Shown here in pieces: positions 20,003 to 39,501 of a stretch of 64,000 bases of DNA. The stretch lies in the IMG/VR virus record IMGVR_UViG_3300044638_006750, positions 1-64,000 of that record; one strand, given 5' to 3'. Both the position numbers and the translations under genes were made by a program. The notes beneath the pieces were generated by a model. The model ran no database searches, was not told the origin of the DNA, and was given only the letters and a program-made list of their open reading frames with translations. Numbering within the stretch: position 1 is the first letter of the stretch; each line of letters opens with the position of its first letter.

Positions 20003-20080
20003 TAAGTCATTGCCACCATTAAACTTACGACTAAATTCGCGGGCCGGGATCTCCCTAAGTCCTTTAGTGGCAACCACTTA
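20003..20080. repeat. 78-bp double-box element, copy 1
   Basis: TAAGT-N15-ACTTA-N28-TAAGT-N15-ACTTA. Confidence 0.9.
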
Positions 20081-20098
20081 CGTCAAATCCACCATCAT

Positions 20099-20141
20099 AA
20101 AAAAGGAGAAGCCGCCCCCCACCCCTGAGGGACGGCTTCCC
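20099..20141 (-). terminator. Rho-independent terminator after the DUF932-like gene
   Basis: Minus strand GGAAGCCGTCCCTCA-GGGG-TGGGGGGCGGCTTCT stem, then CCTTTTTT. Confidence 0.8.
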
Positions 20142-20168
20142 CGAGCCACGCACCACGAAAGGAGAGCG

Positions 20169-21119
20169 TTAGATGGCGTTGGCGAACTGCAATGCAGTGT
20201 CCAATGCCTTGGAGTTGTCGTTCGCATTCTGGCCGAACCAGAGCGAGTCGAGCCGGTTGTCCGACGTGCGACCCTTGCTGTAGTTCAGGTATTCGTTGAA
20301 ACCGTTGTAGGCAGCCCACCACGTTCCACGAACCCCAACCGCAGCCTGCTTCGGACCTTCGACGAGAGTAAGGATCTCGTCCATGATATTGCGGGTGCGA
20401 GTCTTGATCTCCTCGTCCGCAGTACCTTCGATGCCCAGCAGTACCTTGACATACCGACGAACGTCGGCCTGATTGAAGTTCTTCGACGCGAGGAACCGAT
20501 ACTGTTCAGCAGTCGCTTCGAACTCCGCATTGATGTTGTCCATAATGTCACGGACTTGTTCCAGATTGGTCTTGCTGGAGCGGGTGTGACGAATACGGAT
20601 CAGTTTGCTGCCGCTATGCTTGCTGTGAGCAGCGGCGAGCGTGTTGACGCACACAACCCGGATCGGCGTATAGCCGACACGAATGGCGGTTGTGCCGTCG
20701 TGACTGTTCGACAGCAAAATGAACTTGCAAACCTCGTCACCCTTGACGATTTCGCTATTGTCACGGTTGAGTTGGGCAAGCACCCAAACCTTCTGGCCGC
20801 TATGCAGCGAACCGGCAGTGTGCAACTGGCACTCGCCAGCGTCAAGAAACGGCTGGAACCAATCGAACGCATCGCTGTTTTGCAGCGGAGTGTATCGCGG
20901 ACCAACAACCCCCAGAATAGAGTTATCAGTCTTGCGGTACGTTGCACGGGCGGGAACGGGCGTCCCCTCTTGGGTAAACAGGTCTTTCAGACCAACTTCC
21001 CAATCCAGACCAGCGGCGGTAATCGCCTCCGAAACAGTGGGAGCCTCATCCAACTGGTTCCCCAGACCGTGCCACGGGGTCGCACCAACAAACATCATCT
21101 TTTCAACAGCAGCAGGCAT
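20169..21119 (-). CDS. DUF932/DUF945 phage-plasmid protein (TIGR03299-like)
   Basis: PWHGLG, AGLDWEV, LGVVGPRYTPLQN, LLSNSHDG, TPIRVVCVNTL, GTWWAAYNG. Confidence 0.9.
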   Translation of the reverse strand: MPAAVEKMMFVGATPWHGLGNQLDEAPTVSEAITAAGLDWEVGLKDLFTQEGTPVPARATYRKTDNSILGVVGPRYTPLQNSDAFDWFQPFLDAGECQLHTAGSLHSGQKVWVLAQLNRDNSEIVKGDEVCKFILLSNSHDGTTAIRVGYTPIRVVCVNTLAAAHSKHSGSKLIRIRHTRSSKTNLEQVRDIMDNINAEFEATAEQYRFLASKNFNQADVRRYVKVLLGIEGTADEEIKTRTRNIMDEILTLVEGPKQAAVGVRGTWWAAYNGFNEYLNYSKGRTSDNRLDSLWFGQNANDNSKALDTALQFANAI

Positions 21120-21161
21120 ATCTATCCCTTTCGTGTTACTGAACCTTCGTTACGTCCTTCG

Positions 21162-21202
21162 ATTCTACCATCTATTATCGGCATTGTCAAGGGGGTGTCT
21201 TG
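21162..21202 (-). promoter_or_regulatory. sigma70 promoter with nested sigma28-like motif (type example)
   Basis: Minus strand TCAAG-acacccc-c-TTGACA-at-GCCGATAA-tagatgg-TAGAAT; 17-bp -35/-10 spacer. Confidence 0.85.
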
Positions 21203-21222
21203 AGAAAATTTTGTGATTGTCG

Positions 21223-21300
21223 TAAGTCGTTGTGGCGTAAGCACTTACGTTCAGCCGGGGCGCCCCGCCTGATCCTAAGTCCTTGGCGGACTTGGATTTA
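21223..21300. repeat. 78-bp element, copy 2
   Basis: TAAGT-N15-ACTTA-N28-TAAGT-N15-ATTTA. Confidence 0.9.
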
Positions 21301-21781
21301 GGAATGGGGTCTTGTAGCGTTGTTGAAACATTTTGGCTGTTTCTGTAGTGTACGCACATTCATCTGGAATATAGCAATACAATCCATTACATATTGCTTT
21401 GGGATTATCTTCGTATATAGCTTGACGAATCCATTTGAAAGTATCCCCAGAACAAATAAGATCATCTACTACAATATATCTAAAAGGAGAAACTCCTTCA
21501 ATATAAAAATCGCTGTATCGTTTTTCGTCTGGCTTACGAATAACTACAATATTTTTATTTAGCAGTTCTGCTATCTGAGGAACCACCATCAGTCCGCTTA
21601 CACCACAGCAAGCAATACTATCAAATGTATTAGCGATTGGTCGCAAATCACAAACTGCTTTGATAATAATCTTATTCCGGTTCTTGTGGTTCAAAACTCG
21701 ACACGTATGACTAGCACCCTGAATAATCTTGCCATCATCAGTGCGACGAACATCTTCTATAGATTGATTCATAAGATTCAT
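21275..21781 (-). CDS. Type I phosphoribosyltransferase-like protein
   Basis: CGVSG; VIRK; IVVDDLICSGDT PRPP motif. Confidence 0.8.
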   Translation of the reverse strand: MNLMNQSIEDVRRTDDGKIIQGASHTCRVLNHKNRNKIIIKAVCDLRPIANTFDSIACCGVSGLMVVPQIAELLNKNIVVIRKPDEKRYSDFYIEGVSPFRYIVVDDLICSGDTFKWIRQAIYEDNPKAICNGLYCYIPDECAYTTETAKMFQQRYKTPFLNPSPPRT

Positions 21782-21784
21782 AAA

Positions 21785-21864
21785 AACGGATGGTACGATT
21801 CGAACGTACTAGAAAGAAAGGAATAAAGAGATGATAATAACTTGTCCCACCAAGTTGCATCCGT
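21785..21864 (-). ncRNA. tRNA-like RNA with the anticodon arm replaced by a CU-rich single strand
   Basis: Acceptor ACGGATG/CATCCGT; D-like arm ACTTG-GTGGGA-CAAGT; T arm GTACG-TTCGAAT-CGTAC. Confidence 0.7.
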
Positions 21865-21875
21865 CCGAGAGAAGA

Positions 21876-22097
21876 TCAATCGTCAAGTTCGTCAATGTCA
21901 GAGTAGTAACTCTGGAACTCTGTATTGTATGGTTGACTCTCGTCATCATCAGCGTCAGTCATCCATGCTTCATCGGTTCCATCGTCATAGTAGATTTCAT
22001 CTTCAATATAATCAGCATCTTCGGCTAGATTGTGGTAATCGTATTCGTAATCATTCTCTCTCATAATCAACTCTCCTTTGATACCATCATACACCAA
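21876..22097 (-). CDS. Small, very acidic protein
   Basis: D/E/Y-rich; AAGGAGAG RBS before the internal Met (MRENDY). Confidence 0.65.
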   Translation of the reverse strand: MVYDGIKGELIMRENDYEYDYHNLAEDADYIEDEIYYDDGTDEAWMTDADDDESQPYNTEFQSYYSDIDELDD

Positions 22098-22115
22098 TCA
22101 GCCGCTTTTGTCAAG

Positions 22116-22188
22116 TGGGCCTTCTGGGACTCGAACCCAGAACCAATAGATTAAAAGTCTACTGCGCTGCCAATTGCGCCAAAGGCCC
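22116..22188 (-). tRNA. tRNA-Lys(UUU)
   Basis: Cloverleaf GGGCCTT...AAGGCCC-A; anticodon loop CT-TTT-AA. Confidence 0.92.
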
Positions 22189-22225
22189 GTTTAAACATTA
22201 TATCTTATGATTTGTTTTTGTCAAG

Positions 22226-22297
22226 TGACCCCACGGAGAATCGAACTCCGATCTTCGGGATGAAAGCCCGATATACGAACCATTATACTATGGGGCC
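22226..22297 (-). tRNA. tRNA-Glu(UUC)
   Basis: TCGGG-CT-TTC-AT-CCCGA; T loop TTCGATT. Confidence 0.9.
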
Positions 22298-22336
22298 AGC
22301 CTCGCAACTCAACGTCAGCCTCCGAAGCATTAGAAG

Positions 22337-22412
22337 TAGGGCGTGTACGAGTCGAACGTACCTATGACGACCTTATAAGAGTCGCGGATGCTACCGGCTT
22401 ACCTTACGCCCC
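22337..22412 (-). tRNA. tRNA-Ile(UAU)
   Basis: CGACT-CT-TAT-AA-GGTCG; acceptor GGGGCGT/ACGCCCT-A. Confidence 0.8.
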
Positions 22413-22462
22413 GTGTTTTGTATTCTACTCTGTATATCGACCTTTGTCAAGGGAAACTTTAG

Positions 22463-22549
22463 CGGAATCTGAGGGATTCGAACCCCCGGAGGATTTTAAC
22501 CCTCGGCGGTTTAGTAAACCGCTGCCTTAAACCACTCGGCCAAGATTCC
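22463..22549 (-). tRNA. tRNA-Ser(ACU), long variable arm
   Basis: GCGGT-TT-ACT-AA-ACCGC; variable arm GAGGGTTAAAATCCTC; G73. Confidence 0.85.
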
Positions 22550-22551
22550 AA

Positions 22552-22623
22552 CTGGCGAGACAGGATTCGAACCTGTAACCTAGCGGTTAACAGCCGCTTG
22601 CACTACCGTTGTGCTACTCGCCA
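22552..22623 (-). tRNA. tRNA-Asn(GUU)
   Basis: AGCGG-CT-GTT-AA-CCGCT; G73. Confidence 0.92.
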
Positions 22624-22627
22624 ATAA

Positions 22628-22698
22628 TTCCGGGACTACGATTTGAACGTAGAATAAAGGATCCAAAGTCCTCTGTGATACCGTTTCACCATCCCGGA
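22628..22698 (-). tRNA. tRNA-Gln(UUG)
   Basis: GAGGA-CT-TTG-GA-TCCTT; U1-A72. Confidence 0.9.
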
Positions 22699-22699
22699 G

Positions 22700-22771
22700 A
22701 GCCGACGAAAGGATTTGAACCTTCAACCTATTGATTACAAATCAATTGCACTACCGTTGTGCTACATCGGC
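22700..22771 (-). tRNA. tRNA-Thr(UGU)
   Basis: ATTGA-TT-TGT-AA-TCAAT; GCCGATG/CGTCGGC acceptor. Confidence 0.9.
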
Positions 22772-22775
22772 AATC

Positions 22776-22979
22776 TTAGATATCATACTCTTGTCGCCAC
22801 TCCCTGTCAATATCGTTTCTAGTACGGCGACGTTTGGAGCGACTATCGTATGTAGTGTTGACCCGATCCTCTCTGTGTCCCGTAGGCAGTTGCCATTGAG
22901 GCTTGACTTTGATTTTGATTGTGCGTCGGGGTTGTCGAGTATCGTCGTTGTTGTGGTGCATAGTCATGCCATTGTCCAT
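22776..22979 (-). CDS. Small basic protein (W..GH...D.R.KR.RTR family)
   Basis: Paralog at 32986-33156. Confidence 0.6.
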   Translation of the reverse strand: MDNGMTMHHNNDDTRQPRRTIKIKVKPQWQLPTGHREDRVNTTYDSRSKRRRTRNDIDREWRQEYDI

Positions 22980-23208
22980 TTTCGTGCAGATAGAAAACCT
23001 TGTCGATATTAGGATCGTAAGCCATCAAACAGTATTGTATCGGATAAACCGGCTTTGTCAAGACCTGCTTTTGAGGAAGTTTGGGTAACTTGATATCGCC
23101 TTTCTGATAGTCTTTTACACCATTATAAGCCAAACCAAAAATAGCAATCAAAACCCCGAGCCACTGGATCATTCTTTCGCCCCTTCTTGCTGTTCTTCGT
23201 GTCATCAT
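22843..23208 (-). CDS. Hypothetical membrane-anchored protein
   Basis: Hydrophobic WLGVLIAIFGLAY segment; first ORF after a promoter. Confidence 0.6.
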   Translation of the reverse strand: MMTRRTARRGERMIQWLGVLIAIFGLAYNGVKDYQKGDIKLPKLPQKQVLTKPVYPIQYCLMAYDPNIDKVFYLHENGQWHDYAPQQRRYSTTPTHNQNQSQASMATAYGTQRGSGQHYIR

Positions 23209-23263
23209 ACCATATTTATCGGCAATCGTCCAGCCAGGACTTGAGAAGATTTTTGATTTGCTC

Positions 23264-23341
23264 TAAAGTGTTGCGAGATAAGCACTTATGACGAATCCGG
23301 CCGGCCGCCCTTGCCCTAAGTGCTTTAGGGTCAAGGACTTG
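23264..23341. repeat. 78-bp element, copy 3
   Basis: TAAAG-N15-ACTTA-N28-TAAGT-N15-ACTTG. Confidence 0.9.
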
Positions 23342-23343
23342 TG

Positions 23344-23508
23344 TCAAAGGTCTTGCTCAGTCCGTATGTATTCCATAATGTCATCGCAATCCGTACACAC
23401 TGGTTCTCCCATTTCAGAATAATACCAAGGTTCTACATACGCATGATTATCGCACGATGGACATTCCCACAAGTGTCTAATCTTTTTATCGTCAACTATA
23501 ACCCACAT
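23344..23508 (-). CDS. 54-aa zinc-ribbon protein (absent from ORF track)
   Basis: MWVIVDDKKIRHLWECPSCD...PVCTDCDDIMEY...; follows ORF 23511 directly; stop abuts the element. Confidence 0.7.
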   Translation of the reverse strand: MWVIVDDKKIRHLWECPSCDNHAYVEPWYYSEMGEPVCTDCDDIMEYIRTEQDL

Positions 23509-23743
23509 AGTTATTTCTCCATAGTCCAGCCAGCTTTTTGTATCACCTTCGTACTTTTATAGACTTTCGTATCGGGTAGCGCTGTAGCATAATCCTTGAA
23601 TCCTCTTTCATCTACATAGAAATATTCATCCAGTACATCGAACTGATTTGTTTCCCACAAAGCATCTACTGCCGCACCGAACGGCTTTTTACCTGTGGAA
23701 TAAATCAACTCTAAAGTGCCACACTTAATATAGTATTTAGCCA

Positions 23744-24298
23744 TTATATACTCTCATATCTGCAAGCGGTACAGTTACAACTATGTTCAGTCAAACAATC
23801 CCAATCAATTGCTCCCCATATTTCTTCATCAACAAAACCGAAACTTTCAACGCCAAAATCTATTGGAACAAGTATATTGCCGCTTTTGCGTTTGATCCAT
23901 CCAAAGTTAGCACGATGAGCATCTACATAAGATAATCCATGATACTTTTCTAGCGTCCATACAACAGATTGAATATTGATTGAGTTAGAACATTCACTAT
24001 CAAAACATTCTCCGTCACAATATTCTTCATCATAACATTCGGCCATAGGCTTCGCAACCTCAGTGAGATAACCCCACTCCGTCAACTCTCCCGCGTAACG
24101 TATACGTCCAACATCCCCATAAACTTTTGGAGCCATAGCCATATCGGCCAACCCACTCTGAATACGATGGGCAAAGTCAGCGTTGTCTTTATCCTGAAAA
24201 CATTTAAAACCAAGCCTCTTATTCCCAACAATCCTAAAGAAAGTATTCCTACTTCCTGCATCATCATACAATCCAACATAAGAACTAGGCATTATCAA
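23744..24298 (-). CDS. Protein-kinase-like fold protein
   Basis: GFKCF (beta3 Lys), APKVYG, catalytic-loop-like DAHRAN, IDFG. Confidence 0.65.
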   Translation of the reverse strand: MIMPSSYVGLYDDAGSRNTFFRIVGNKRLGFKCFQDKDNADFAHRIQSGLADMAMAPKVYGDVGRIRYAGELTEWGYLTEVAKPMAECYDEEYCDGECFDSECSNSINIQSVVWTLEKYHGLSYVDAHRANFGWIKRKSGNILVPIDFGVESFGFVDEEIWGAIDWDCLTEHSCNCTACRYESI

Positions 24299-24537
24299 CT
24301 CCCAAGGCTAATCACAACAGTATTATCGTACTTTCCAAACTCTACAATAATATCAAAATCATTATCGTCAAGTATAGACTGTAGCGTTTCCTGACTAATA
24401 AGAGTGTCTGTATTGGTACCAAAACTAATATCACTATTAGAAATGGCTTCCATCACACTACCATAGTCCAACTCGTTATAGTCACAAACTTCTCTAAGGT
24501 CGAGATATTCCCAAGCATAACTTTTCATATTTTATCC

Positions 24538-25242
24538 TTAGTGTGCAGGAAACAATACGTTAGCCAGACCCTTGACGCACATATCGCATGATATACTATC
24601 TTTAGTTCCGGTGCAAGTGATAACCGAGCGACCGCGACGGATTTCTGGACAAACCACAAACTTAGTCGCATTGAGAACAACCAGTTTCGGCAACGCTTTC
24701 CGCCATGCGTCGGCCTTTGCCTTGTTTTTCGGACGCTTAGGTGCAACCTTCATATCGCTATCACACCATGCGAACAGTTTGAAACCTTGGGCCAGTGCTT
24801 CGCCCATGTCGTTATCATCATGCACACTAGCGTATACATTCATATACTTTTGCAGACTCACAAGCCGGGAATCGTAGATATGAGTATAGAACCACATATC
24901 GGGCAGCGTATCGCCATCGGCCAGGATACTCTCACAAGCCCATGTCACGTTGGCAACATAGTCTAGGTCAAGTTCACCATTGAGAAACCAATCGCCACGC
25001 TCATGCCACCGAATAGACTTCTCACGACGCTTTGCGTCCAGAATCATAGCACGGATTTTATTCTTCTCGGTCACGACATTAGCAAAACCAGCAGTACGAG
25101 CGTTCTTATACTGCTTCTCAGTTTGCTCTGCATAGCAACCGTTGTCAAGATAATCACAATCAGGAGGACAAGTGTCCCCAACAGGACGAGAAACAACAAC
25201 ACAACCCTTGCCCAACTTATCGTTACCATCTGCCGTTTTCAT
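24538..25242 (-). CDS. Gp88-like Cys-rich protein
   Basis: TCPPDC...GCYA, IRWHERGD, WFYTH, VCPE...TC...CDMC. Confidence 0.6.
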   Translation of the reverse strand: MKTADGNDKLGKGCVVVSRPVGDTCPPDCDYLDNGCYAEQTEKQYKNARTAGFANVVTEKNKIRAMILDAKRREKSIRWHERGDWFLNGELDLDYVANVTWACESILADGDTLPDMWFYTHIYDSRLVSLQKYMNVYASVHDDNDMGEALAQGFKLFAWCDSDMKVAPKRPKNKAKADAWRKALPKLVVLNATKFVVCPEIRRGRSVITCTGTKDSISCDMCVKGLANVLFPAH

Positions 25243-25327
25243 GGTTTTCTCCTAGCGTGTCTCTCGATTCTACACTAGATTATCGGCACAGTCAAGAGGA
25301 AAACTTTAGAGAGAAAAAGATTTGTCG

Positions 25328-25405
25328 TAAAGTCTTATGGGGTCAGCACTTACGACGAACCCGGCCGCCCGAATTTGTTCTAAGTCTTTACCCTTAAAGA
25401 ACTTA
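25328..25405. repeat. 78-bp element, copy 4
   Basis: TAAAG-N15-ACTTA-N28-TAAGT-N15-ACTTA. Confidence 0.9.
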
Positions 25406-25462
25406 GGAGTACTTCACACAGTTTTAAAAACTGCTCAGTAGTTTCAGCATCGTTTTTCATAA

Positions 25463-25534
25463 TAGCCCCAAGAGGAATCGAACCTCTAATACAGGATTAG
25501 AAATCCCGTGTTATATCCGTTTAACTATGGGGCC
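25463..25534 (-). tRNA. tRNA-Arg(UCU)
   Basis: CGGGA-TT-TCT-AA-TCCTG; GGCCCCA/TGGGGCT acceptor. Confidence 0.85.
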
Positions 25535-25806
25535 GCATTGCTATTATAACATAACCCACTCAACGCCGCAAGCCCCCGTGGCGTCCCACGGAGGCATTTG
25601 CGGTTTTATGGTGTTATCGGCTACCATCTCCATAAGTAATATACTCTAGAAGCCCAATAACTTCAAGGTCACCATCCTATTATTGGCTGGTTAGGCTCTT
25701 CTAGGTTGCACCTTTAAGTCTTGCAACGGACTATCATTACGCGGGAGTTATCCCGCCGCACTATGCCTAAAATCTATTTATACTGGCATAGTCCAGTTTG
25801 TTGATG

Positions 25807-26265: not shown

Positions 26266-26343
26266 TAAGTCGTTTAGCCGTAAGGACTTACGTCGAACCC
26301 GGCCCGCCTGCCTAGTCCTAAGTTCTTTAGGGACAAGGCTTTA
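26266..26343. repeat. 78-bp element, copy 5
   Basis: TAAGT-N15-ACTTA-N28-TAAGT-N15-CTTTA. Confidence 0.9.
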
Positions 26344-26345
26344 GG

Positions 26346-27436: not shown

Positions 27437-27514
27437 CAAAGTGTTGAACTATAAGCACTTACGACGATTTCGGCCCGCCGAACTTGTCCTAAGTCTTTAT
27501 GTGATCACTAGTTA
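27437..27514. repeat. 78-bp element, copy 6
   Basis: CAAAG-N15-ACTTA-N28-TAAGT-N15-AGTTA. Confidence 0.88.
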
Positions 27515-29836: not shown

Positions 29837-29914
29837 TAACCCTATGATACACAAGCACTTACGACAAACTCGGCGGGCCACCCTCGTCCTAAGTACCCTT
29901 GGGCAAAGCACTTA
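29837..29914. repeat. 78-bp element, copy 7
   Basis: TAACC-N15-ACTTA-N28-TAAGT-N15-ACTTA. Confidence 0.9.
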
Positions 29915-31121: not shown

Positions 31122-31199
31122 TAAACCCTTGTCGGATAAGGACTTACGTCATGCGGGGCGGCGCGGCCTTACCCTAAGTGCTGCAATAGCAACACCTTA
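31122..31199. repeat. 78-bp element, copy 8
   Basis: TAAAC-N15-ACTTA-N28-TAAGT-N15-CCTTA. Confidence 0.9.
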
Positions 31200-31221
31200 G
31201 GGCTTGGCTCGACATTTGATA

Positions 31222-32403: not shown

Positions 32404-32481
32404 TAAACCTATGGCAGATAAGAACTTACGACAAATCGGGCCGCTCCGCCTCACCCTAAGTGCTTTAGGGATAAGGCTTTG
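32404..32481. repeat. 78-bp element, copy 9
   Basis: TAAAC-N15-ACTTA-N28-TAAGT-N15-CTTTG. Confidence 0.9.
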
Positions 32482-33156: not shown

Positions 33157-33218
33157 GTTCTTTACTCTACCATATTATCGACCAAAGTCAAGCACAACCT
33201 GTAAGAATTTTTTTGTCA

Positions 33219-33296
33219 TAAGTCATTGGCAGCAAAAGACTTAGAACTAATCCGAGCGGCCCCGCTTGCCACAAGTGCTGTAGCAGCAAGGGTTTA
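33219..33296. repeat. 78-bp element, copy 10
   Basis: TAAGT-N15-ACTTA-N28-CAAGT-N15-GTTTA. Confidence 0.88.
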
Positions 33297-33545
33297 CGAT
33301 CAGAAATCTCCAACAGTATTCAAGCGTACAGGCTCGCTCTTGAATGAACATACATTCAGTCCACTAGCAGCCACAACAGTATCGAACATGATACCGAGAA
33401 ACTCCTGCCTTTCAACTGCTGTACTCATATCATGTTCTGGCAACTCTAACAGAAACTCACGATCAACGGCAATCTCATCACCATTATCATTCTCTACGAG
33501 AATATCATAGAAGCGATGCGTGTTCATACTGTGCTCTCCTTGGGT

Positions 33546-33866
33546 TCAATCGTAGTAGGGGCCATCTTCGTTGTAATCAACATAACCGATTGCATCATCG
33601 GCATGGAAATCCTCTCGGTCATCTCCGTAGTAGCCGTAATCCTCATCTGTTCCCCAACCGCATGACGCAAGGCCGGACTCGTGATCTCCGTCCATATCAT
33701 CATTAATATCCTCATCAACCCAGTCCACCTCTCCACTATTATCATCCTCGTCGTAAAAGTCGTTGTAATCGTCATAGTTAGAATCTTCTTCGTCGCCAAC
33801 GTAGGCCATGTCATCGTCCTCATAAGCGTTATCGGGATCGAACAGGGGGTCAGGGTGACTCATCAT
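33546..33866 (-). CDS. Extremely acidic protein (DGDHESGLASCGWGTDEDYG)
   Basis: D/E-dominated; AG-rich RBS; own promoter. Confidence 0.75.
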   Translation of the reverse strand: MMSHPDPLFDPDNAYEDDDMAYVGDEEDSNYDDYNDFYDEDDNSGEVDWVDEDINDDMDGDHESGLASCGWGTDEDYGYYGDDREDFHADDAIGYVDYNEDGPYYD

Positions 33867-34170
33867 CTTCCTCTCTTTCTTGTATCGGCAGTCTACCAGA
33901 AAAACTTTAGGCTGTCAAGCCCTACCAGCCGTTTCGGCGATATTCTTCTCGGAGTTCCTCTTCTTCACGACGCTGACGATCATTCACAGGAGGGCCATAT
34001 CCCAGATCATATGCTTCTCGCGCAGCATCATATCCATCATCAGAATCTTCGTCATTCCATTGGTCGTATCGACTCATCTTTCACTCTCACTTTCTCTACT
34101 TCTTATATCGTCAAGTCTAGCATCTCAACTTTAGCCTGTCAAGAGAAAATCTAAAAATTTTTTGTTGACG

Positions 34171-34248
34171 TAAACTGTTGAGACATAAGGACTTACGTTT
34201 CGCGGGGCCGGCCGGCCTCACCGCAAGTGCTTATGCGGCAAGGCTTTG
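34171..34248. repeat. 78-bp element, copy 11
   Basis: TAAAC-N15-ACTTA-N28-CAAGT-N15-CTTTG. Confidence 0.88.
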
Positions 34249-34915
34249 CGTCAAACCGTAAACTCTACGTCCGGTTCGATCTGGTCACTAATCCCCACCA
34301 CCTCAGCCCAATCGTAAAAATCGACTTGGACACTAGGATCATCAATCGGCTCAACCATCGGCTCAAGAATACCCTGCTCTGCCATCTCGTCAAGGATCCG
34401 GTTTACTGCGTCGAAATCCAGCATACTGTTTTCCTTTGGGGTGGTGAGAACAAAAGCCATCATATGCGGAAAGTGTGTCATTGTCAAGCCCTTATTTCAT
34501 GAGTCTAAGAACAGCCTCCAACCTCGCAATTTCCAGCCTCAATTCAGCCACCTTGCCGAACATCCTAGCCTGTCGATAATTGTCGATATCGTATCGCAGG
34601 CTTATGATCTGATAGTTGATGGTTTCGCGTGTCATGGTCTTCCTTTCTCTAATCTAGTCTACACTCGGCCGTCCTACTTGTCAATACGCTTCTCAAAAAT
34701 TGTGTCCAAATAAATCTCTTTTTCACTGACCACCCATCCATACTCACAACGAGGGGTATACACACCAATATAGACTTTCCCTTTTTCGACTCCCTCAAAT
34801 CCCAGACCATAACCGAACAACCCAGCCAGAAATATCATAGAGAACATAAAAGGTTCCTTTCTATGTATATTATCGGCTAATTCCCGCTAACATCTTTAGC
34901 ACAAATAATTTCACC

Positions 34916-34993
34916 TAAATCCCTATCCTGCAACAACTTACGACCAGCCGGGGCGCGCCCCTGCATCGTAAGTCTTTACGTCGCAAGGGTTTG
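34916..34993. repeat. 78-bp element, copy 12
   Basis: TAAAT-N15-ACTTA-N28-TAAGT-N15-GTTTG. Confidence 0.88.
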
Positions 34994-35091
34994 CGTCAAT
35001 TTTTGTTATTGTAGAACGGACTGATTACACAATAGGCAAAACCGACATATCCGATGATGAACATTAAGGCACTGAACATTTTATAGTCTTT

Positions 35092-35928
35092 CTATTTACA
35101 GGGTTGCAGATCGTATAGGGAACAGTGGACAGTCCTACCGTCATCATACTGTACTGATGCCCAAGCATCTTTTGTACCATAAATCTCATCGGCCAAGACA
35201 CCCATGAAACATTTCACCACAACCTTTTGACCGTCCAGCATCACAGTATCCCCGTATCGAGGGGTGTGTTCAGCAGTAAACATTTTTAGTTTTCGTCCTT
35301 CCATGCAAATGGGCTGATTTCTTCGCCATATGCCGTAATGGCTTCGTACTGAGCCTTCAACGCTTCCACACGCTCTTTGCTGCCCGGCTTGCCAACCTTC
35401 ACGATCATGGTATCGTCTCCACCAATAAGCCGAGGATCGGCCTTCTCGACACGAATTTTGCCGAGCCGACGCAGTGCTTTCCGATTGAACTTCAAAACCT
35501 TTTCAGAAACCACATACCGCTTCTGGTCTGCAACTCCGTAAACGTAGTCGGTATCTTCGGTGATTCGATCATCGGGAATCTCTACCAGCATGGGAATCGC
35601 GATACCCTTGAAAACCATACGGGCCTGACGCTTGGCGTTCTCAATAATGGCAAACTTCGTTTTCATCTTTGTCTCTCTTTCTTGTGTGTGGATTCTAGCA
35701 ACCTGTCTACCGCTTGTCAAGCCCTCAAATCTTCCAGTGGGAGAACTTCAGGGTGAACACTTGTCCAGGGTACTTGCTTGCGATGTACGCTTCGGCGGTT
35801 TCCTTCCGATTGTCGGTAGCCGAAACACCCTGAACCACCTTACCGTCGATGATGACGCTCCAGATTCGACGCTTGCGAATCTTCGGCAGGGAAGCGATGA
35901 AACTGTTGACGCTAGTGACCTTTTCCAT
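35092..35928 (-). CDS. Hypothetical early ORFs (35725-35928, 35286 to about 35666, 35092 to about 35284)
   Basis: AG-rich leaders (AGAAAGAGAGA...ATG). Confidence 0.7.
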
Positions 35929-36052
35929 CTTTTCTCTCTCTTTCTTTCTCTTATATCGACATTATACCATGGATTCTTGAGGTTGCAAGAGAAATCTAGA
36001 AATTTTTGTGTCAAGATTTTTTGACAAAACTTTTGCCTGCTTTTTGAGCATT

Positions 36053-36068
36053 TGGCATACTATTTGCT
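36053..36068 (+). promoter_or_regulatory. sigma54-type -24/-12 motif
   Basis: TGGCATACTATTTGCT (GG-N10-GC). Confidence 0.55.
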
Positions 36069-36077
36069 AGTGCGTCA

Positions 36078-36155
36078 TAAGTTCTTGTGGCTTAAGCACT
36101 TACGTCAAAATTTGCCCGCCCTCCTCGTTGTAAGTCTATATGCGGCAAGCAGTTA
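36078..36155. repeat. 78-bp element, copy 13
   Basis: TAAGT-N15-ACTTA-N28-TAAGT-N15-AGTTA. Confidence 0.9.
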
Positions 36156-36912
36156 CGATTAGTTTTCGCGTCCTACATACCAAGTTTTCCCACTATCGTC
36201 TTTCATTTTTTTCCACCCCATTTTCGCAAAATACCTATCTTGAAGATAGTTGTCAACAAGCCTAAATGTTTGCAAGAAAATCCACCAACCAACCGTAGAG
36301 CCAACAAACCAAGCCCCAATAAACCATATTGCCAAGGTTGCCCACATCTCCACCTCTGCTTCACTCATGTTTCCCCTTTCGGTTTAGGATACGCCCATCC
36401 AAGAAGCGTTTTCACAACAATAATCGTAGAACATATCGTTCAGAACTTCTTCATAGTTCTTATCTTTCAAGAGCCTACGGTCAAGGGTTGAGTCACACTC
36501 AGCATAAAACTTACCCTTTCCTACTTCAAACACAATCGTACAGGCATGAGCCTCACTACCCCAAATCCTAGCCTTAGCATCCACAAACTTCTTCAACATC
36601 TTTTTCTCTCTTTCTTAGTACGATTCTAGTAGATGGTTTCAATGTTGTCAAGCCCCACAAGCCACTTCCCACTCATGGGGCATATAGCCTTTTTGCAGTT
36701 CGGTTGTGCTGCACTCGCATTGCACACCGGCCAGATCGACCACCCATACATCACCCTCGTCGAAGTACCAATCAACAATCTTTCCAGTGATTCCACCAAG
36801 CCGAACCTTGTCACCAATCTCGTACATTCTAGCCTTTCTTTCTTGTTGCCTGTATTCTATACATCTATTATCGACTTGTCAACAGTGAAAACTGAAGAAA
36901 TTTTTTTAGACT

Positions 36913-36990
36913 TAAAGTGTTGGTGTGTAAGTAGTTACGTCAAATCGGAGCGGCCGGCCTCGCCGTAAGTTCTTTACGGACAAGGCTTTA
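36913..36990. repeat. 78-bp element, copy 14
   Basis: TAAAG-N15-AGTTA-N28-TAAGT-N15-CTTTA. Confidence 0.88.
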
Positions 36991-36992
36991 TG

Positions 36993-37292
36993 TCAACCCA
37001 CAACCATACGGTCTTCAAACGGTGTACCATCGTTCAGGTACCACTCATAGTTCTTCTGGTATACCTGTACGGGTGAATACTGGTTGATACGCTTCTTCGT
37101 GGTGTGTGTACGCCATCCACCACTATTCAGCATCACAGTATCATCGGGATAGATTACTACAACATTCGTACCGTGCAACTCGATTGCAACGCTACCATCT
37201 GCTTGAATGTAGGCATAGGTGTTGTTGCCAACCTTTCGTTGTCCACGATTACGCTTACCCAAAACCATCTTCGTTGCTTCTGCGTGTGTCAT
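36993..37292 (-). CDS. Phage hypothetical protein (LHG...LNSGGWRT.TTK.RIN family)
   Basis: Motif recalled from phage early proteins (unverified); stop abuts the element. Confidence 0.7.
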   Translation of the reverse strand: MTHAEATKMVLGKRNRGQRKVGNNTYAYIQADGSVAIELHGTNVVVIYPDDTVMLNSGGWRTHTTKKRINQYSPVQVYQKNYEWYLNDGTPFEDRMVVG

Positions 37293-37703
37293 TTTTTCTT
37301 TCAGTTAAAAAGGTTTTCCAGCCATTCACGATACATCTCGCCCATCGCACAAAAAACTTCATGCAGAATATAGGTGAGTCCTGCACATGCACACAGTAGA
37401 GCCAAATCCACAAAAGTCATTTCTTTTTCCTCTTTGGAGAGTCTAGTATATCGTCTCTCGCTGGTCCTGTCAATACTCTCCACAATCTTCGACAACTTCT
37501 TCTCCAATCACTTCGCAGTGTTCGCAGCACTTCGGGCAAATACCATAATCCACTTGGGCGAAGGTCATCTCACAGCCGCAGCAATCCGAAGTGAAGTAGA
37601 CCCGAATGACGTTTTCCATGGTTTTCCTTTCCTCTTGTGTTGTGTCTATTATACTTATCGGCATATTCCTGTCAATACCTTAAAAAGATTTTTATACAAG
37701 CCA

Positions 37704-37781
37704 TAAGTGGTTGTCAGATAAGCACTTACGTCAAACGCGGCGCGCCCCGCTTTTCGTAAGTCTTTATGGGCTAAGGTTTTA
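37704..37781. repeat. 78-bp element, copy 15
   Basis: TAAGT-N15-ACTTA-N28-TAAGT-N15-TTTTA. Confidence 0.9.
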
Positions 37782-38371
37782 CGTTATAGAGCGGATGCTC
37801 TCCCGATACCTGAACCGCAGTTCAGTAGCAGCAGCCCGAATCACCTCGCATAGCACCTCTTTTAGAGCACCCTTCGCATGGGGGAGTTGAAGCTGTGCCT
37901 CACGCAGAGTCAACTGAATCGTGCTGGTTTGCATAGTGTCGAATGATGGCTGAAAATAGCTGGTATTCATCTGTTCTCTCTTTCTGTGGTTGTATCCTAC
38001 CGTATCCACGCTTGGCTGTCAAGTCGTGTAGGCATTGGTAAGCCGATGATACTTAGCCCACAACTCATCTACCACGAACTGCACAACCCGATCATGAGAA
38101 CCACGGCAAACGTAGTATCCCATGTGAATGTCGAACAGGGCATACGTCCCATCCGTTTGGGGGTGGAACGTGAAGCCACACTTGTAGGCGTAGGCGTTGA
38201 TCTTACCCTTGATCGTCGAAGTCTTAGGAGGCTTTCTCATTTTCTTCTCTCTCTTTCTCTCTTACTTCTTATATCGACATTATACCAGCCCCTACTTGAG
38301 TTTGCAAGAGAAAAATCTAGATTTTTATGTCAAGAAATTTTGACAAAATTTTTCTGTATTTTGAGTATGTT

Positions 38372-38387
38372 TGGCACACCAATTGCT
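38372..38387 (+). promoter_or_regulatory. sigma54-type -24/-12 motif
   Basis: TGGCACACCAATTGCT (GG-N10-GC), near consensus. Confidence 0.6.
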
Positions 38388-38396
38388 ATATCGTCA

Positions 38397-38474
38397 TAAC
38401 CCTATATCTCATAAGTACTTACGTCGAATCCGAGCCGCCCCGCTAGTCGTAAGTCTTTATCAGATCACCACTTA
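38397..38474. repeat. 78-bp element, copy 16
   Basis: TAACC-N15-ACTTA-N28-TAAGT-N15-ACTTA. Confidence 0.9.
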
Positions 38475-38476
38475 GG

Positions 38477-38578
38477 TCACATGTGGTCATTATAGATTAT
38501 TTCGATCTGCCTAAACACATAGAACAACAGCATAGTGATGGTGGAAGCAAAACACAGGTCGATAATCAGCCTAATCAT
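38477..38578 (-). CDS. 33-aa membrane peptide (absent from ORF track)
   Basis: AAGGAG RBS; MIRLIIDLCFASTITMLLFYVFRQIEIIYNDHM; stop abuts the element. Confidence 0.6.
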   Translation of the reverse strand: MIRLIIDLCFASTITMLLFYVFRQIEIIYNDHM

Positions 38579-38630
38579 GAGCAACTCCTTTTTCGGTATT
38601 CTACACTATGGATTCTGAACAATCAAGCCC

Positions 38631-39391
38631 TTAGCAAGCGTAGATAAAAACTTTTTCATTCACACAACGATTACTAATCGTCACAATCCAATTCTTTCCG
38701 CTTCCGTCTTCTCTCATGATGCTATTCACCAGCCCGCAGTGAGCGTTGCCCTTGGGGTCGATCACACCAATATACTTACCAGCAGTCATAGCAGCGAAAA
38801 TCTTGCTCAGGTTGTTGTTGTGCTTGGTCATGTTCTTTTCTCCTTAGTGATTGTATTCTATAAGATTATTCTAGGCTGTCAATACTGTACGCTTGTTTAG
38901 AGAATCGTACCATCACCACGAATACGATACATGATACCGCCGATACTGTACAGAACAATACCCTCTCCGAGATGCTGAACAAACGTAGCCGAGTAGCCGT
39001 GTCGAGCAACCAACCGTCGAACCGTATTTTGCACTTGAATCGTCATTTTATTTCTCTCTTTCTTATACGTATATTCTATCAAGATTTTTTAGCGTGTCAA
39101 TACTGATCAGTAGTACAGTCCGTCAGCAACCACCTCACCGTTCTCATTCACCTCGATAAACTCTCCCTCATCGCCCATCGGGAAAAAATACTGAATATAT
39201 CCGTACTCGTCGTTCAGAGCCTCTTCGAGCAACTCGCCACCGATGCGAGCAATCCCAACCAAGGTATCGGGAGAAGTGCTATCCGCACCGTACAGGAACT
39301 CAACCAACTCGTCTCGGGTGTTCAAGGTAACCATTTTTATCATCTCCTCTTGTGTTGAACGTATTATACATATCGGCTTTTCTCGTGTCAA
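38631..39391 (-). CDS. Three small ORFs, each behind its own sigma70-like promoter (39107-, 38897-, 38631-)
   Basis: TTGACA and TAGAAT/TATAAT at about 39363-39391, 39073-39100 and 38855-38882. Confidence 0.7.
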
Positions 39392-39423
39392 TACCTTAGA
39401 AAAAAATTTTTCTGTAATTATCC

Positions 39424-39501
39424 TAAGTCCTTATTTATCAAACACTTACGAACAATCGGGCGGATTAAAATCGTCGTAAGTACTTATGCCCCAACAACTT
39501 A
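39424..39501. repeat. 78-bp element, copy 17 (right edge)
   Basis: Perfect TAAGT-N15-ACTTA-N28-TAAGT-N15-ACTTA; contains TATCAAACACTTA. Confidence 0.92.

What the first reader, a model, noticed from the sequence alone, without database searches (positions are those of the whole stretch)
20003..39501. 17 copies of a rigidly spaced 78-bp double-palindrome element partition the early region
Seen: copies start at 20003, 21223, 23264, 25328, 26266, 27437, 29837, 31122, 32404, 33219, 34171, 34916, 36078, 36913, 37704, 38397 and 39424. Each has two 25-bp inverted-repeat boxes (consensus TAAGTnnTTr-N5-yAAnnACTTA) separated by exactly 28 bp of GC-rich, variable sequence. Lengths are invariant in all 17 although the inner bases diverge. 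The box period of 53 bp is about 5 helical turns, so both boxes face the same side of the helix. I saw none outside 19.7-39.5 kb. Known: each half-site matches the 3' part of the IHF consensus WATCAANNNNTTR (perfect at 39436-39448, TATCAAACACTTA), and four half-sites in two inverted pairs is also the layout of integron attC sites. Inference: a dsDNA protein-binding scaffold, for example IHF/HU-type bending to boost the adjacent promoter, a phage regulator operator, a recombination site, or a decoy array titrating a host protein. I recognise no named element with this geometry.
Basis: partly seen in the sequence, partly recalled or inferred. Interest (0 to 1): 0.92.

Follow-up and report, generated by a model that had tools for sequence, protein, structure and literature searches.

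The report
Repeated double-operator modules before phage promoters
Seventeen copies of a rigid 78-bp, four-half-site DNA motif sit just upstream of strong host-type promoters in the early-gene array of an uncultivated 233-kb phage, and the motif recurs in many related phage contigs. It behaves like a protein-binding control site, not an RNA hairpin, IHF site or integron site, and no named element matches it.

Summary
There are exactly 17 gap-free, co-oriented copies at the stated coordinates, plus three solo half-elements at 18.7-19.9 kb. The genes here lie on the minus strand, so each element follows a gene end. It is followed, 20-42 bp later, by a near-consensus sigma70-type promoter.

The element is widespread. 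I collected 365 unique copies from about 95 IMG/VR phage contigs, with the ACTTA-N28-TAAGT spacing essentially invariant. It was absent from isolate bacterial genomes.

No base-pair covariation exists for any hairpin model, so the symmetry reflects four independently conserved 16-bp half-sites (TnGnCnTAAGTCCTTR). The distance from element to -35 clusters at 20, 30-31, 41-42, 53 and 64 bp, roughly one helical turn apart. Element-linked promoters also carry a private spacer motif, CCGATAAT. Solo boxes overlap a -35 hexamer or a transcription start.

My best reading is a double operator for a phage-encoded dimeric DNA-binding regulator that acts on the adjacent promoter. The repeated module also serves as a junction for cassette shuffling, as PeSLs do in T4-type phages. 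The IHF and attC readings fail their tests. The binding protein is not identified; a conserved small helical/AT-hook protein at the head of the array is the lead candidate.

The parts
39424..39501 (-). 78-bp double-palindrome element, copy 1 (first after the S8 subtilase gene)
   Evidence: Followed by promoter TTGACA-17-TATAAT at 39363-39391.
38397..38474 (-). element copy 2
   Evidence: Downstream promoter TTGCAA-17-TATAAT (TG-extended) at 38279-38307.
37704..37781 (-). element copy 3
   Evidence: The upstream ORF's stop codon is the element's first TAA. Promoter at 37648-37675 with spacer GCCGATAAG.
36913..36990 (-). element copy 4
   Evidence: Promoter at 36854-36882 with spacer GTCGATAAT.
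36078..36155 (-). element copy 5
   Evidence: Promoter TTGCAA-16-TATAAT at 35961-35988. Its downstream flank is a paralogue of that of copy 2.
34916..34993 (-). element copy 6
   Evidence: Only a degenerate promoter follows (about 34862-34890), but it keeps the CCGATAAT spacer motif.
34171..34248 (-). element copy 7
   Evidence: Promoter at 34114-34142.
33219..33296 (-). element copy 8
   Evidence: Promoter TTGACT-16-TAGAGT at about 33164-33191.
32404..32481 (-). element copy 9
   Evidence: Promoter at 32346-32373 with spacer GCCGATACT.
31122..31199 (-). element copy 10
   Evidence: Promoter at 31063-31090 with spacer GCCGATAAT.
29837..29914 (-). element copy 11
   Evidence: Promoter at 29768-29796 with spacer GACGATAAT; linker about 40 bp.
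27437..27514 (-). element copy 12
   Evidence: Promoter at 27388-27416 with spacer GCCGATAAT; short 20-bp linker.
26266..26343 (-). element copy 13
   Evidence: Promoter at 26195-26223 with spacer GCCGATAAT; 42-bp linker.
25328..25405 (-). element copy 14 (58 nt after tRNA-Arg)
   Evidence: Promoter at 25267-25295 with spacer GCCGATAAT.
23264..23341 (-). element copy 15
   Evidence: Weak -35 (TGGACG) and TATGAT at about 23204-23232, with CCGATAA in the spacer.
21223..21300 (-). element copy 16
   Evidence: The upstream ORF (21275-21781) reads 26 nt into the element. Promoter at 21162-21190 with spacer GCCGATAAT.
20003..20080 (-). element copy 17 (last; just after the only canonical terminator)
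   Evidence: Promoter TAGACA-18-TACAAT at 19938-19967.
19899..19931 (.). solo box (single 25-bp palindrome with flanks), starting 6 nt after the -10 of the 19938-19967 promoter, so it covers the transcription start
   Evidence: PWM score 13; sequence context.
19748..19780 (.). solo box whose right arm overlaps a -35-like TTGCGT (17 bp before TATACT)
   Evidence: PWM score 25-30; nhmmer half-hit; context.
18724..18756 (.). solo box whose right arm overlaps a -35-like TTGTGG of a promoter with CCGATA spacer and TG-extended TATACT
   Evidence: PWM score 20-21; context.
20105..20142 (-). the only strong intrinsic terminator in the array (17-bp stem plus T-run), just upstream of copy 17
   Evidence: Terminator-like sites are otherwise not enriched (15 found against 14.3 expected).
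43846..44193 (-). candidate trans-acting factor (tentative): small protein (likely start ATG at 44082) with a three-helix domain, an invariant RRQRRK and an AT-hook-like RGR(P/R). It is the first gene of the leftward transcription direction.
   Evidence: Conserved in 322 IMG/VR stretches. In many of them the array starts 0.3-2 kb downstream on the same strand. No direct evidence of binding.

Best explanation
Each 78-bp element is the core of a roughly 90-bp double operator in duplex DNA. It has four 16-bp half-sites (TnGnCnTAAGTCCTTR) arranged as two 37-bp palindromic boxes whose centres lie 53 bp apart, on one face of the helix. A conserved GC-rich 16-bp centre separates the boxes.

I propose that a phage-encoded dimeric DNA-binding protein binds it as two dimers (or one tetramer). 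The best candidate is the conserved small helical/AT-hook protein encoded at 43846-44193 (-).

The element is one part of a composite module of about 170 bp: stop codon of the preceding gene, element, A/T-rich linker, then a near-consensus sigma70-type promoter with the private spacer motif CCGATAAT.

The promoters are already near consensus, and solo boxes overlap -35 hexamers or transcription starts. I therefore favour negative or switch-type control: timed shut-off or clamping of RNA polymerase at one class of early promoters, possibly also blocking read-through from the upstream unit. I do not favour simple activation.

Because the module is repeated 17 times in direct orientation, it also acts as a junction for homologous recombination that shuffles, inserts and deletes gene cassettes.

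Shown: the anatomy, the family-wide conservation, the lack of covariation, the phasing, the promoter association and the breakpoints at modules. Inferred: that a protein binds, which protein it is, and the sign of regulation.
For: (1) Rigid geometry across the family. ACTTA-N28-TAAGT occurs 348 times in 958 kb of related loci, against 6 or fewer at any other spacing from 10 to 49.

(2) Position-specific conservation in 365 unique copies from about 95 contigs whose loci range from 31 to 58% GC.

(3) No covariation. Observed pairing equals the product of the marginals for box-A, box-B and long-hairpin models. The top mutual-information pairs are all adjacent bases. RNAalifold finds only the invariant ACTTA/TAAGT pairing. 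Pair counts do not exceed shuffles: 69.1% against 70.3%, and 69.5% against 71.3%.

(4) All 17 window copies are followed by a promoter or promoter remnant. In the family, 193 of 350 have a promoter scoring at least 10/12 within 110 nt downstream on the sense strand. The same test gives 4 upstream on the sense strand and 27 antisense.

(5) The offset from element end to -35 peaks at 20, 30-31, 41-42, 53 and 64. Rayleigh R is 0.59 at a period of 10.5-11.5, against 0.28 for the 99.9th percentile of the null.

(6) The spacer motif CGATA is present in 189 of 241 element-linked promoters, against 113 of 861 other strong promoters in the same loci.

(7) Solo boxes overlap a -35 (18724, 19748) or the transcription start (19899) in the window. 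Across the family they cluster at three positions relative to promoters.

(8) The element is absent from isolate genomes. A scan of 185,579 species found it only on small MAG contigs that carry arrays, plus one chance hit.

(9) The candidate protein has a confident three-helix core (pLDDT about 90-93 over residues 11-60). Its top Foldseek neighbours are HTH/Myb/winged-helix DNA-binding domains, though none is significant. AT_hook matches appear in 11 of 21 members. Of 53 loci with at least 3 kb of downstream flank, 35 have an array downstream of this gene on the same strand.

(10) Recombination junctions between L125 and L128 fall at E+40, E+57, E-2 and E+126..136, and a whole cassette insertion is flanked by the repeated module. 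Cassette order differs among relatives.
Against: There is no binding data of any kind, because the phage is uncultivated.

The consensus is self-complementary. Sense-strand RNA folds at -14 to -32 kcal/mol with a mean z of -2.0, so an RNA or cruciform role cannot be excluded by thermodynamics alone.

The phasing peaks could partly reflect a few homologous linker designs inherited by many phages, or 10-11-bp duplications, rather than many independent events. Linker clustering could not separate the classes.

Within the window the offsets spread over 27-32, which is looser than strict face-of-helix coupling.

Foldseek matches for the candidate protein are not significant (best E 0.78). Its link to the array may be mere synteny within one clade. 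Eighteen of the 53 loci with at least 3 kb of downstream flank show no element in that flank, although three of those contigs have arrays further away.

No boxes were found near the candidate's own promoter.
Confidence: 0.5

Rival explanations
1. The element is only a recombination substrate, a PeSL-like mobile regulatory cassette. The module is conserved because it is copied and homogenised (duplication, gene conversion) and because it carries a promoter. No dedicated binding protein exists, and the palindromes are historical baggage or a former terminator.
For: Breakpoints between relatives fall inside the module, and one cassette insertion is flanked by it. One indel is bounded by repeated promoter/RBS sequence. 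Cassette order is shuffled. The array is 92-93% identical between two phages whose backbones are 68-80% identical, and its GC content differs from that of the backbone. PeSLs are described as doing exactly this (PMC4122927, PMC2839356).
Against: Homogenisation predicts even similarity within a genome. It does not predict the same invariant positions interleaved with free positions in 365 copies from about 95 contigs. It also does not explain the exact N28 spacing, the fourfold half-site symmetry, the helical phasing to the promoter, or solo boxes overlapping promoter cores.
Confidence: 0.15
2. The element works as RNA at the 3' end of each early transcript. It could be a protective hairpin, an RNase III or RNase E processing site like those between T7 early genes, or an unconventional terminator.
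For: It lies right after stop codons and is always in the sense orientation. The consensus can form a long imperfect hairpin of about 22 bp. Sense-strand folds are more stable than shuffles (mean z -2.0, against -1.1 for the antisense strand). Some symmetric positions favour G-U on the sense strand, for example e32-e47. Canonical terminators are otherwise missing from the array.
Against: There is no compensatory change at any variable stem position in 365 copies. Individual copies fold into different structures. No U-tract follows any stable stem. There is no Rfam match even at E up to 1. Box A would pair better on the antisense strand and box B on the sense strand. An RNA role does not explain phasing to the downstream -35, or solo boxes upstream of or overlapping promoters.
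Confidence: 0.15
3. The element is a binding array for a conserved host protein such as IHF, HU, Fis or another nucleoid protein. It would serve either to bend DNA and boost the promoter, or as a decoy that titrates the host factor.
For: Every half-site contains yAA-N4-TTA, the 3' part of the IHF consensus (332 of 365 copies). An A5T5 tract follows the element. The promoters are host sigma70-type.
Against: The WATC part of the IHF consensus is not conserved: full matches occur in 37 of 365 copies, and 1 of 17 in the window. The invariant bases (A21 C22 and G57 T58) fall in IHF's N4. IHF sites are asymmetric rather than nested palindromes. The element is absent from isolate bacterial genomes, so the putative host factor would have no such sites of its own. 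The same half-site is kept in contigs whose loci range from 31 to 58% GC, which is easier to explain if the binder travels with the phage.
Confidence: 0.1
4. The element is a site-specific recombination site, making this an integron-like or dif/lox-like cassette system. Each box would be a recombinase core site, with two arms around a 5-7-bp spacer.
For: The layout of four half-sites in two inverted pairs resembles attC. Each box resembles a tyrosine-recombinase core site. Cassettes are bounded by the elements, and their order is shuffled.
Against: The central spacers of the boxes are the least conserved positions (0.03-0.3 bits), so partner sites would lack overlap identity. attC is defined by conserved structure with variable sequence, which is the opposite of what is seen here. 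No GTTRRRY box is present. No integrase, resolvase or transposase domain was found among about 124 ORFs covering the window. Junctions fall at different places in the module, as expected for homologous rather than site-specific exchange.
Confidence: 0.05

Closest known systems
PeSL (promoter-early stem-loop) cassettes of T4-type phages (Arbiol 2010, PMC2839356; Comeau 2014, PMC4122927)
   Same: Both are composite, repeated intergenic modules in a hyperplastic region of small ORFan genes. Each has a palindromic unit, then an A/T-rich stretch, then a sigma70-like promoter, then SD and start codon. Both are found at indel and exchange junctions between related phages.
   Different: The PeSL palindrome is a short terminator-type stem-loop with variable sequence. 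Here it is a rigid 78-90-bp array of four sequence-conserved half-sites, without a U-tract and without covariation. It is phased to the promoter, and the promoter has its own conserved spacer motif. The phages are unrelated to T4: the best cultured terminase match is 24% identical, to Bacillus siphoviruses.
Stoperators of cluster-A mycobacteriophages (L5 gp71 type; PMC9283540)
   Same: Both have many copies of one protein-binding site spread through short intergenic spaces, with orientation strictly correlated with the direction of transcription. Sites occur both at promoters and between genes.
   Different: Stoperators are 13-bp asymmetric sites bound by a monomeric immunity repressor of temperate phages, and they occur genome-wide. 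Here the sites are double palindromes of about 90 bp, confined to one 20-kb array, always upstream of a promoter, in what looks like a lytic large phage. No integrase or repressor was seen in the window.
phi29 p4 binding regions (PMC3100819)
   Same: In phi29, each regulatory region holds two imperfect inverted repeats, each an independent dimer site. The sites lie upstream of or overlap the -35 of host-RNAP promoters. Recognition combines a few base contacts with A-tract shape. The same protein represses strong early promoters and activates a weak late one.
   Different: phi29 has only two such regions, with a different sequence (CTTTTT-N15-AAAATG). There is no GC-rich centre and no repeated cassette array.
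Integron attC sites
   Same: Both have four half-sites in two inverted pairs, bound gene cassettes, and share a similar length range.
   Different: attC conserves structure, not sequence. It recombines as a folded single strand, carries R''/R' boxes (RYYYAAC/GTTRRRY) and needs IntI. None of these features is found here.
REP/BIME and REPIN elements of bacterial chromosomes
   Same: Both are extragenic palindromic units, often in pairs, located after gene ends.
   Different: REP elements are chromosomal and occur in both orientations. They are hairpin-forming, and compensatory change has been reported for REPINs (own knowledge). They are mobilised by RAYT transposases. Here there is no covariation and no such transposase in the window. 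The orientation is strict, promoter coupling is obligatory, and the element is restricted to phages.
RNase III processing sites between T7 early genes
   Same: Both are repeated, sequence-related structured elements of 60-80 nt between early genes.
   Different: The T7 sites act as RNA within one long transcript from upstream promoters. Here each element is followed by its own promoter and shows no support for a conserved RNA fold.

Membership tests
Integron attC | Secondary structure conserved through compensatory changes while the sequence varies (R''/R' and L''/L' pairing) | tested here: not met
   Sequence is conserved instead. Pairing at variable positions equals chance in 365 copies. There is no excess over shuffles.
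Integron attC | R' box GTTRRRY and R'' box RYYYAAC at the ends | tested here: not met
   GTTRRRY occurs in 22 of 365 copies at scattered positions, and in 1 of 17 in the window.
Integron attC | Adjacent integron integrase (IntI) and attI | tested here: not met
   No Phage_integrase or recombinase family was found among about 124 ORFs of the window. The other 169 kb of the contig were not examined.
IHF binding site | Asymmetric consensus WATCAANNNNTTR | tested here: not met
   Full consensus is present in 37 of 365 family copies and 1 of 17 window copies. Only the CAANNNNTTR part is general.
IHF binding site | Binding and bending by IHF | not testable with these tools
   Needs EMSA or footprinting.
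PeSL (T4-type promoter-early stem-loop) | Sigma70-like early promoter preceded by an A/T-rich region and followed by SD and start codon | tested here: met
   Seen in 17 of 17 window copies, three of them weak or degenerate, and in 193 of 350 family copies at 10/12 or better.
PeSL (T4-type promoter-early stem-loop) | Short terminator-type stem-loop just upstream of the promoter | tested here: not met
   It is replaced by a 78-bp four-half-site array. There is no U-tract and no structure conservation.
PeSL (T4-type promoter-early stem-loop) | Located in hyperplastic regions and at indel or exchange junctions between close relatives | tested here: met
   Cassette order differs among five relatives. 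Junctions fall at E+40, E+57, E-2 and E+126..136, and one cassette insertion is flanked by the module. This is a small sample.
PeSL (T4-type promoter-early stem-loop) | Occurs in T4-like myoviruses | tested here: not met
   Terminase is only 24% identical to its best cultured matches, Bacillus siphoviruses. There is no nucleotide similarity to any of 50,697 phage records apart from tRNA.
Mycobacteriophage-type stoperator | Short asymmetric site (13 bp) bound by a monomeric immunity repressor | tested here: not met
   The sites are nested palindromes of about 90 bp. No repressor or integrase was identified.
Mycobacteriophage-type stoperator | Many intergenic copies, orientation tied to the direction of transcription | tested here: met
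   All 17 window copies are co-oriented with the genes. In the family, 193 promoters lie on the sense side against 27 on the antisense side.
Intrinsic (Rho-independent) terminator | GC-rich stem-loop immediately followed by a U-tract | tested here: not met
   The scan finds no enrichment (15 against 14.3 expected), and the elements are not called as terminators, apart from partial chance stems.
Known RNA family (Rfam 15) | Match to a curated covariance model | tested here: not met
   No match at the elements, at gathering score or at E up to 1.
REP/BIME/REPIN | Hairpin-forming palindromic units in bacterial chromosomes, with an associated RAYT transposase | tested here: not met
   Absent from isolate genomes. 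No covariation. No Y1/HUH transposase family in the window.

The most novel reading that the evidence does not exclude
A large, uncultivated and apparently freshwater clade of big phages (at least 322 contigs encode the marker protein) runs its early-gene array with a previously undescribed cis-element. The element is a roughly 90-bp nested-palindrome double operator, helically phased to a private class of sigma70 promoters and read by one small phage-encoded helical/AT-hook protein. A single factor would then switch or insulate some 17 transcription units at once. The same repeated module would also be the junction at which gene cassettes are exchanged between phages. That would combine the logic of stoperators, phi29 p4 and PeSLs in one element.
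Probability: 0.3. Interest if true: 0.8.

Novelty: new variant of a known kind. Interest (0 to 1): 0.62.

Why it matters
If the model holds, this is a compact, portable and strongly conserved regulatory part. It would pair a near-consensus sigma70 promoter with a long, high-information double operator whose binder is probably a protein of about 75 residues. It would show how a large lytic phage coordinates or shuts down dozens of small early genes, and how it keeps tandem strong promoters from interfering with one another.

It also gives a second, independent example, outside the T4 group, of repeated regulatory modules acting as junctions for cassette shuffling in a horizontally exchanged, compositionally distinct accessory-gene island.

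The element is a sharp sequence marker (23 fixed bases, essentially no false positives in 596 Gb of genomes). It can be used to recognise this phage clade, and to flag phage contigs mis-binned into MAGs.

Tried and rejected
- RNA or cruciform structure. RNAalifold on both strands, per-copy folds with shuffles, mutual information with APC on 365 copies, observed-against-expected pairing for three models and the pair-count tool on two models all gave no support.
- Rfam, at gathering score and at E up to 1: nothing at the elements.
- Intrinsic terminators: not enriched.
- IHF consensus and attC R boxes: not conserved.
- Target-site duplication (the flanking GAC...GAC): rejected, because these bases are conserved parts of the half-site and do not covary.
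- ECF-type or other alternative promoter within the element: the spacing does not fit (inspection of the consensus).
- Recombinase, transposase or HU/IHF genes in the window: none found in Pfam scans of about 124 ORFs. One search listed only 25 of 27 families.
- Close cultured relatives: none.
- Cassette proteins as binder candidates (F0, F2, F3 and others): no informative Pfam or PHROG hits.
- Separating linker classes into independent lineages by k-mer clustering: failed, because nearly all linkers merged into one cluster. The phasing statistic therefore cannot be fully corrected for shared ancestry.
- PDB profile search for the candidate protein: no hit. Foldseek: only non-significant HTH-type neighbours.
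- A box near the candidate gene's own promoter: none found.

Full report
CONTEXT. The window is the first 64 kb of a 232,683-bp IMG/VR contig, IMGVR_UViG_3300044638_006750; the coordinates coincide. It is a phage. A terminase, a portal and other structural genes run on the plus strand from 44 kb. Everything from 1 to 44 kb is transcribed leftward on the minus strand. No cultured phage is close: only tRNA matches at the DNA level, and the terminase is 24% identical to Bacillus siphoviruses. The stretch from 20 to 40 kb is a compositional island, at 43-49% GC against 30-37% on either side. It holds about 45 small, mostly unannotatable ORFs, nine tRNA genes and a Pistol ribozyme.

The 17 copies align without gaps. 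A profile HMM finds exactly these 17 in the window, with E-values from 1e-13 to 2e-20. The core ACTTA-N28-TAAGT is far above chance, since 0 of 100 shuffles reach the observed count. All copies have the same orientation.

Read on the coding (minus) strand, the order is as follows. First comes the end of a gene, whose stop codon is often the TGA at -4..-2 or the element's own first TAA. Then come the element, GACAA plus an A5T5-like tract, and a promoter.

Three further solo boxes (half-elements) lie at 18724, 19748 and 19899.

A WIDESPREAD FAMILY. In those 958 kb the profile finds 426 sites, of which 365 are unique, full-length and in register, from about 95 contigs. The inner spacing is 28 bp in 348 cases and anything else in at most 6.

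A 23-base pattern scanned over one genome for each of 185,579 bacterial and archaeal species found only 12 stretches. Eleven were contigs from metagenome bins of eight different taxa, ten of them short and one of 141 kb, and all eleven carried elements (six showed two or more in the stretch held). The twelfth was a chance match on a complete chromosome that the profile rejects.

In relatives that share the S8 subtilase gene (44-65% amino-acid identity), the array starts at the same place, right after that gene, and continues for at least 10 kb.

ANATOMY. The family profile shows nested dyad symmetry. Four half-sites share the consensus TnGnCnTAAGTCCTTR and are arranged forward-reverse, then forward-reverse. 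Each pair forms a 37-bp palindromic box with about 5 free central bases. The box centres are 53 bp apart. The 16 bp between the boxes are GC-rich, with G36, C42 and C43 well conserved.

The inner half-sites are nearly invariant (ACTTA and TAAGT at 97% or more). The outer ones alternate among a few dinucleotide variants. Within a half-site the conserved blocks TAA and CCTT lie half a turn apart, which is what a reading head in the major groove plus a contact in the adjacent A/T minor groove would give. This last point is inference.

NOT A BASE-PAIRED STRUCTURE. RNAalifold finds only the invariant ACTTA/TAAGT pairing on the sense strand and nothing on the other. Individual copies fold into different shapes. 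In 365 copies the strongest mutual information is always between adjacent bases. For each of three models (box A hairpin, box B hairpin, one long hairpin), the fraction of canonical pairs at every position equals the product of the column frequencies. The pair-count tool gives 69.1% and 69.5% paired, against 70.3% and 71.3% in shuffles, with covariation scores below the shuffled mean.

The palindromy is therefore a property of four independently conserved half-sites. That is the signature of a symmetric protein on duplex DNA. There is no Rfam match and no terminator signature.

COUPLING TO A SPECIAL CLASS OF PROMOTERS. The array contains about 40 near-consensus sigma70-type promoters on the minus strand, against about 36 weak matches expected on both strands together, but only 17 elements. 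Every element is followed by a promoter or a promoter remnant, whereas most promoters have no element.

Element-linked promoters share a spacer motif, (G)CCGATAAT. Family-wide it is present in 189 of 241 element-linked promoters, against 113 of 861 other strong promoters in the same loci.

The distance from the end of the element to the -35 hexamer is not free. It peaks at 20, 30-31, 41-42, 53 and 64 bp. Rayleigh R is 0.59 at periods of 10.5-11.5 bp and falls to 0.11 at 20 bp. The 99.9th percentile of the null is 0.28. The same peaks appear when promoters are anchored on the -35 plus the spacer motif. The linker classes have different sequence make-up, but they are few and inherited. The effective number of independent events is therefore smaller than the counts suggest, and I treat the phasing as good but not conclusive evidence.

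Solo boxes add to the picture. In the window one starts 6 nt after a -10 hexamer, and two overlap -35-like hexamers. In the family they cluster just downstream of starts, over the -35, or about 60 bp upstream, as box B does in a full module.

WHAT IT MOST LIKELY DOES. The simplest account is a double operator for a phage-encoded dimeric regulator that communicates with RNA polymerase at the adjacent promoter. The promoters are already close to consensus and have UP-like tracts, so an activator seems unnecessary. Operator positions over the -35 and the start site suggest repression.

I therefore favour timed shut-off or clamping of one class of early promoters, perhaps with a roadblock for transcription arriving from upstream. 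The array has essentially no intrinsic terminators other than the one at 20105-20142. The sign of regulation is inference.

The precedents are phi29 p4, where two inverted-repeat sites per region repress strong early promoters and activate a weak late one (PMC3100819), and the oriented intergenic stoperators of mycobacteriophages (PMC9283540).

A CANDIDATE BINDER. At the head of the leftward transcription direction lies a small ORF, 43846-44193 (-), with a likely start at 44082. It sits divergent from a sigma70_r2-like gene (44381-45010, +). It is conserved in 322 IMG/VR stretches. Its core is Y-KKW...FI..N...D..LA..LS..TG.N.T..MVRRQRRKL...K.RGRP.K.

AlphaFold gives three confident helices followed by a disordered basic tail. 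Foldseek neighbours are HTH, Myb or winged-helix DNA-binding domains, but none is significant. AT_hook matches occur in 11 of 21 members.

In many contigs the array begins 0.3-2 kb downstream of this gene on the same strand. Of 53 loci with at least 3 kb of downstream flank, 35 show elements, and three of the remaining 18 are known to have arrays further away. This makes it the lead candidate, no more: synteny within one clade would give the same picture.

A SECOND, EVOLUTIONARY ROLE. Cassette order differs among relatives, and element positions shift between homologous genes. Between L125 and L128, alignment blocks end at E+40, E+57, E-2 and E+126..136, and a two-gene cassette is inserted between two copies of the element-plus-promoter module. 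Between L128 and L129, a one-gene indel is bounded by repeated promoter/RBS sequence.

The array is 92-93% identical between those two phages, although their backbones are 68-80% identical. Its GC content is 42-44% whatever the backbone. The array thus behaves as a horizontally exchanged island in which repeated regulatory modules serve as recombination junctions, as proposed for PeSLs in T4-type phages (PMC2839356, PMC4122927). The junction positions vary within the module and no recombinase was found. Homologous recombination is therefore more likely than site-specific exchange.

COMPARISON AND NOVELTY. The module works like a PeSL in position and in evolutionary role, and like an operator or stoperator array in its likely mechanism, but it is a member of neither. 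The short terminator hairpin of PeSLs is replaced by a long, rigid, sequence-specific four-half-site array phased to a private promoter class. Stoperators are short asymmetric monomer sites of temperate phages. The attC, IHF-site, REP/REPIN, terminator and Rfam memberships were each tested and not met. I found no description of this element in two full-text searches aimed at repeated intergenic or palindromic elements in phages. I rate it a new variant of a known kind: repeated phage regulatory cassettes and operator arrays.

LIMITS. There is no experiment and no cultured host. Only 64 of 233 kb were examined. The phasing statistic is not corrected for shared ancestry. The binder is unproven.

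Noticed in passing
window 25735-25797 (-): Pistol self-cleaving ribozyme (Rfam RF02679, 53.7 bits against a gathering score of 34.5). It lies between a small ORF (25807-26094) and tRNA-Arg (25463-25534), inside one cassette of the array.
   Followed up: no
window 22115-22771, 25463-25534, 29011-29085 (-): Nine tRNA genes lie inside the array, each group with its own strong promoters. The one at 29011-29085 is called with a four-base anticodon (gaga) by ARAGORN and scores only 37.8 bits in Rfam. It may be a frameshift-suppressor-like or a degenerate tRNA.
   Followed up: no
window 20000-40000; L121, L123, L125, L128, L129: The array is a GC island (42-49% against 30-38% for the backbone) in every relative examined. 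It is more similar between two phages (92-93%) than their backbones are (68-80%), which suggests the whole early array is exchanged horizontally.
   Followed up: partly
promoter spacers, e.g. window 21168-21184, 25273-25289, 26201-26217, 27394-27410, 31069-31084: Element-linked promoters carry a conserved spacer motif (G)CCGATAAT between -35 and -10 (78% of them, against 13% of other strong promoters). Its role is unknown: it could be a second operator or a feature read by a modified RNA polymerase.
   Followed up: partly
linkers downstream of the elements, e.g. window 26224-26265; L026, L039, L111: A CTCAAG/CTAAAG motif sits about 8 nt upstream of the -35 in most modules. In the 41-42-bp linkers an inverted copy creates a small palindrome, TTGAG-N5-CTCAA.
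   Followed up: no
window 43846-45806: This is the divergent control region. A small helical/AT-hook protein faces leftward. A sigma70 region-2-like protein (44381-45010) and a 267-aa protein with an N-terminal HTH-like stretch (45006-45806) face rightward at the head of the structural genes. The latter two are probably the phage's own late-transcription factors.
   Followed up: partly
window 1-19700 (-): About 50 tightly packed, overlapping small genes with no elements and low GC. They include RNA ligase (44-1084) and RtcB (2446-3813); endonuclease VII, NUDIX, a phosphoribosyltransferase and GDP-mannose dehydratase also scored in the same Pfam scan, which took in seven ORFs at 43.8-47.6 kb and did not give positions. 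This looks like a separate, later operon fed by the promoters that carry the solo boxes.
   Followed up: no
window 39620-43832 (-): Between the candidate regulator and the array lie GlmS-like glutamine-fructose-6-phosphate aminotransferase (42006-43832), a GNAT acetyltransferase (41277-41738) and an S8 subtilase (39620-41287). In many relatives these are absent and the array follows the regulator gene directly.
   Followed up: partly
window 36078-35930 and 38397-38250 (-): The flanks downstream of element copies 5 and 2 are paralogous (about 74% over 230 bp). They carry a different promoter design (TTGACA, then TTGCAA-N16/17-TATAAT with TG), which indicates duplication of a whole module within the array.
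   Followed up: no
Genome-contig loci L132-L142: Contigs with arrays of the element (ten of 1-21 kb, one of 141 kb) sit in MAGs labelled Gammaproteobacteria, Alphaproteobacteria, Rhodobacteraceae, Flavobacteriales, Methylococcaceae, Hyphomicrobium, Planctomycetota and an unclassified bacterium. They are almost certainly phage contigs mis-binned. Several record titles point to lake metagenomes.
   Followed up: partly
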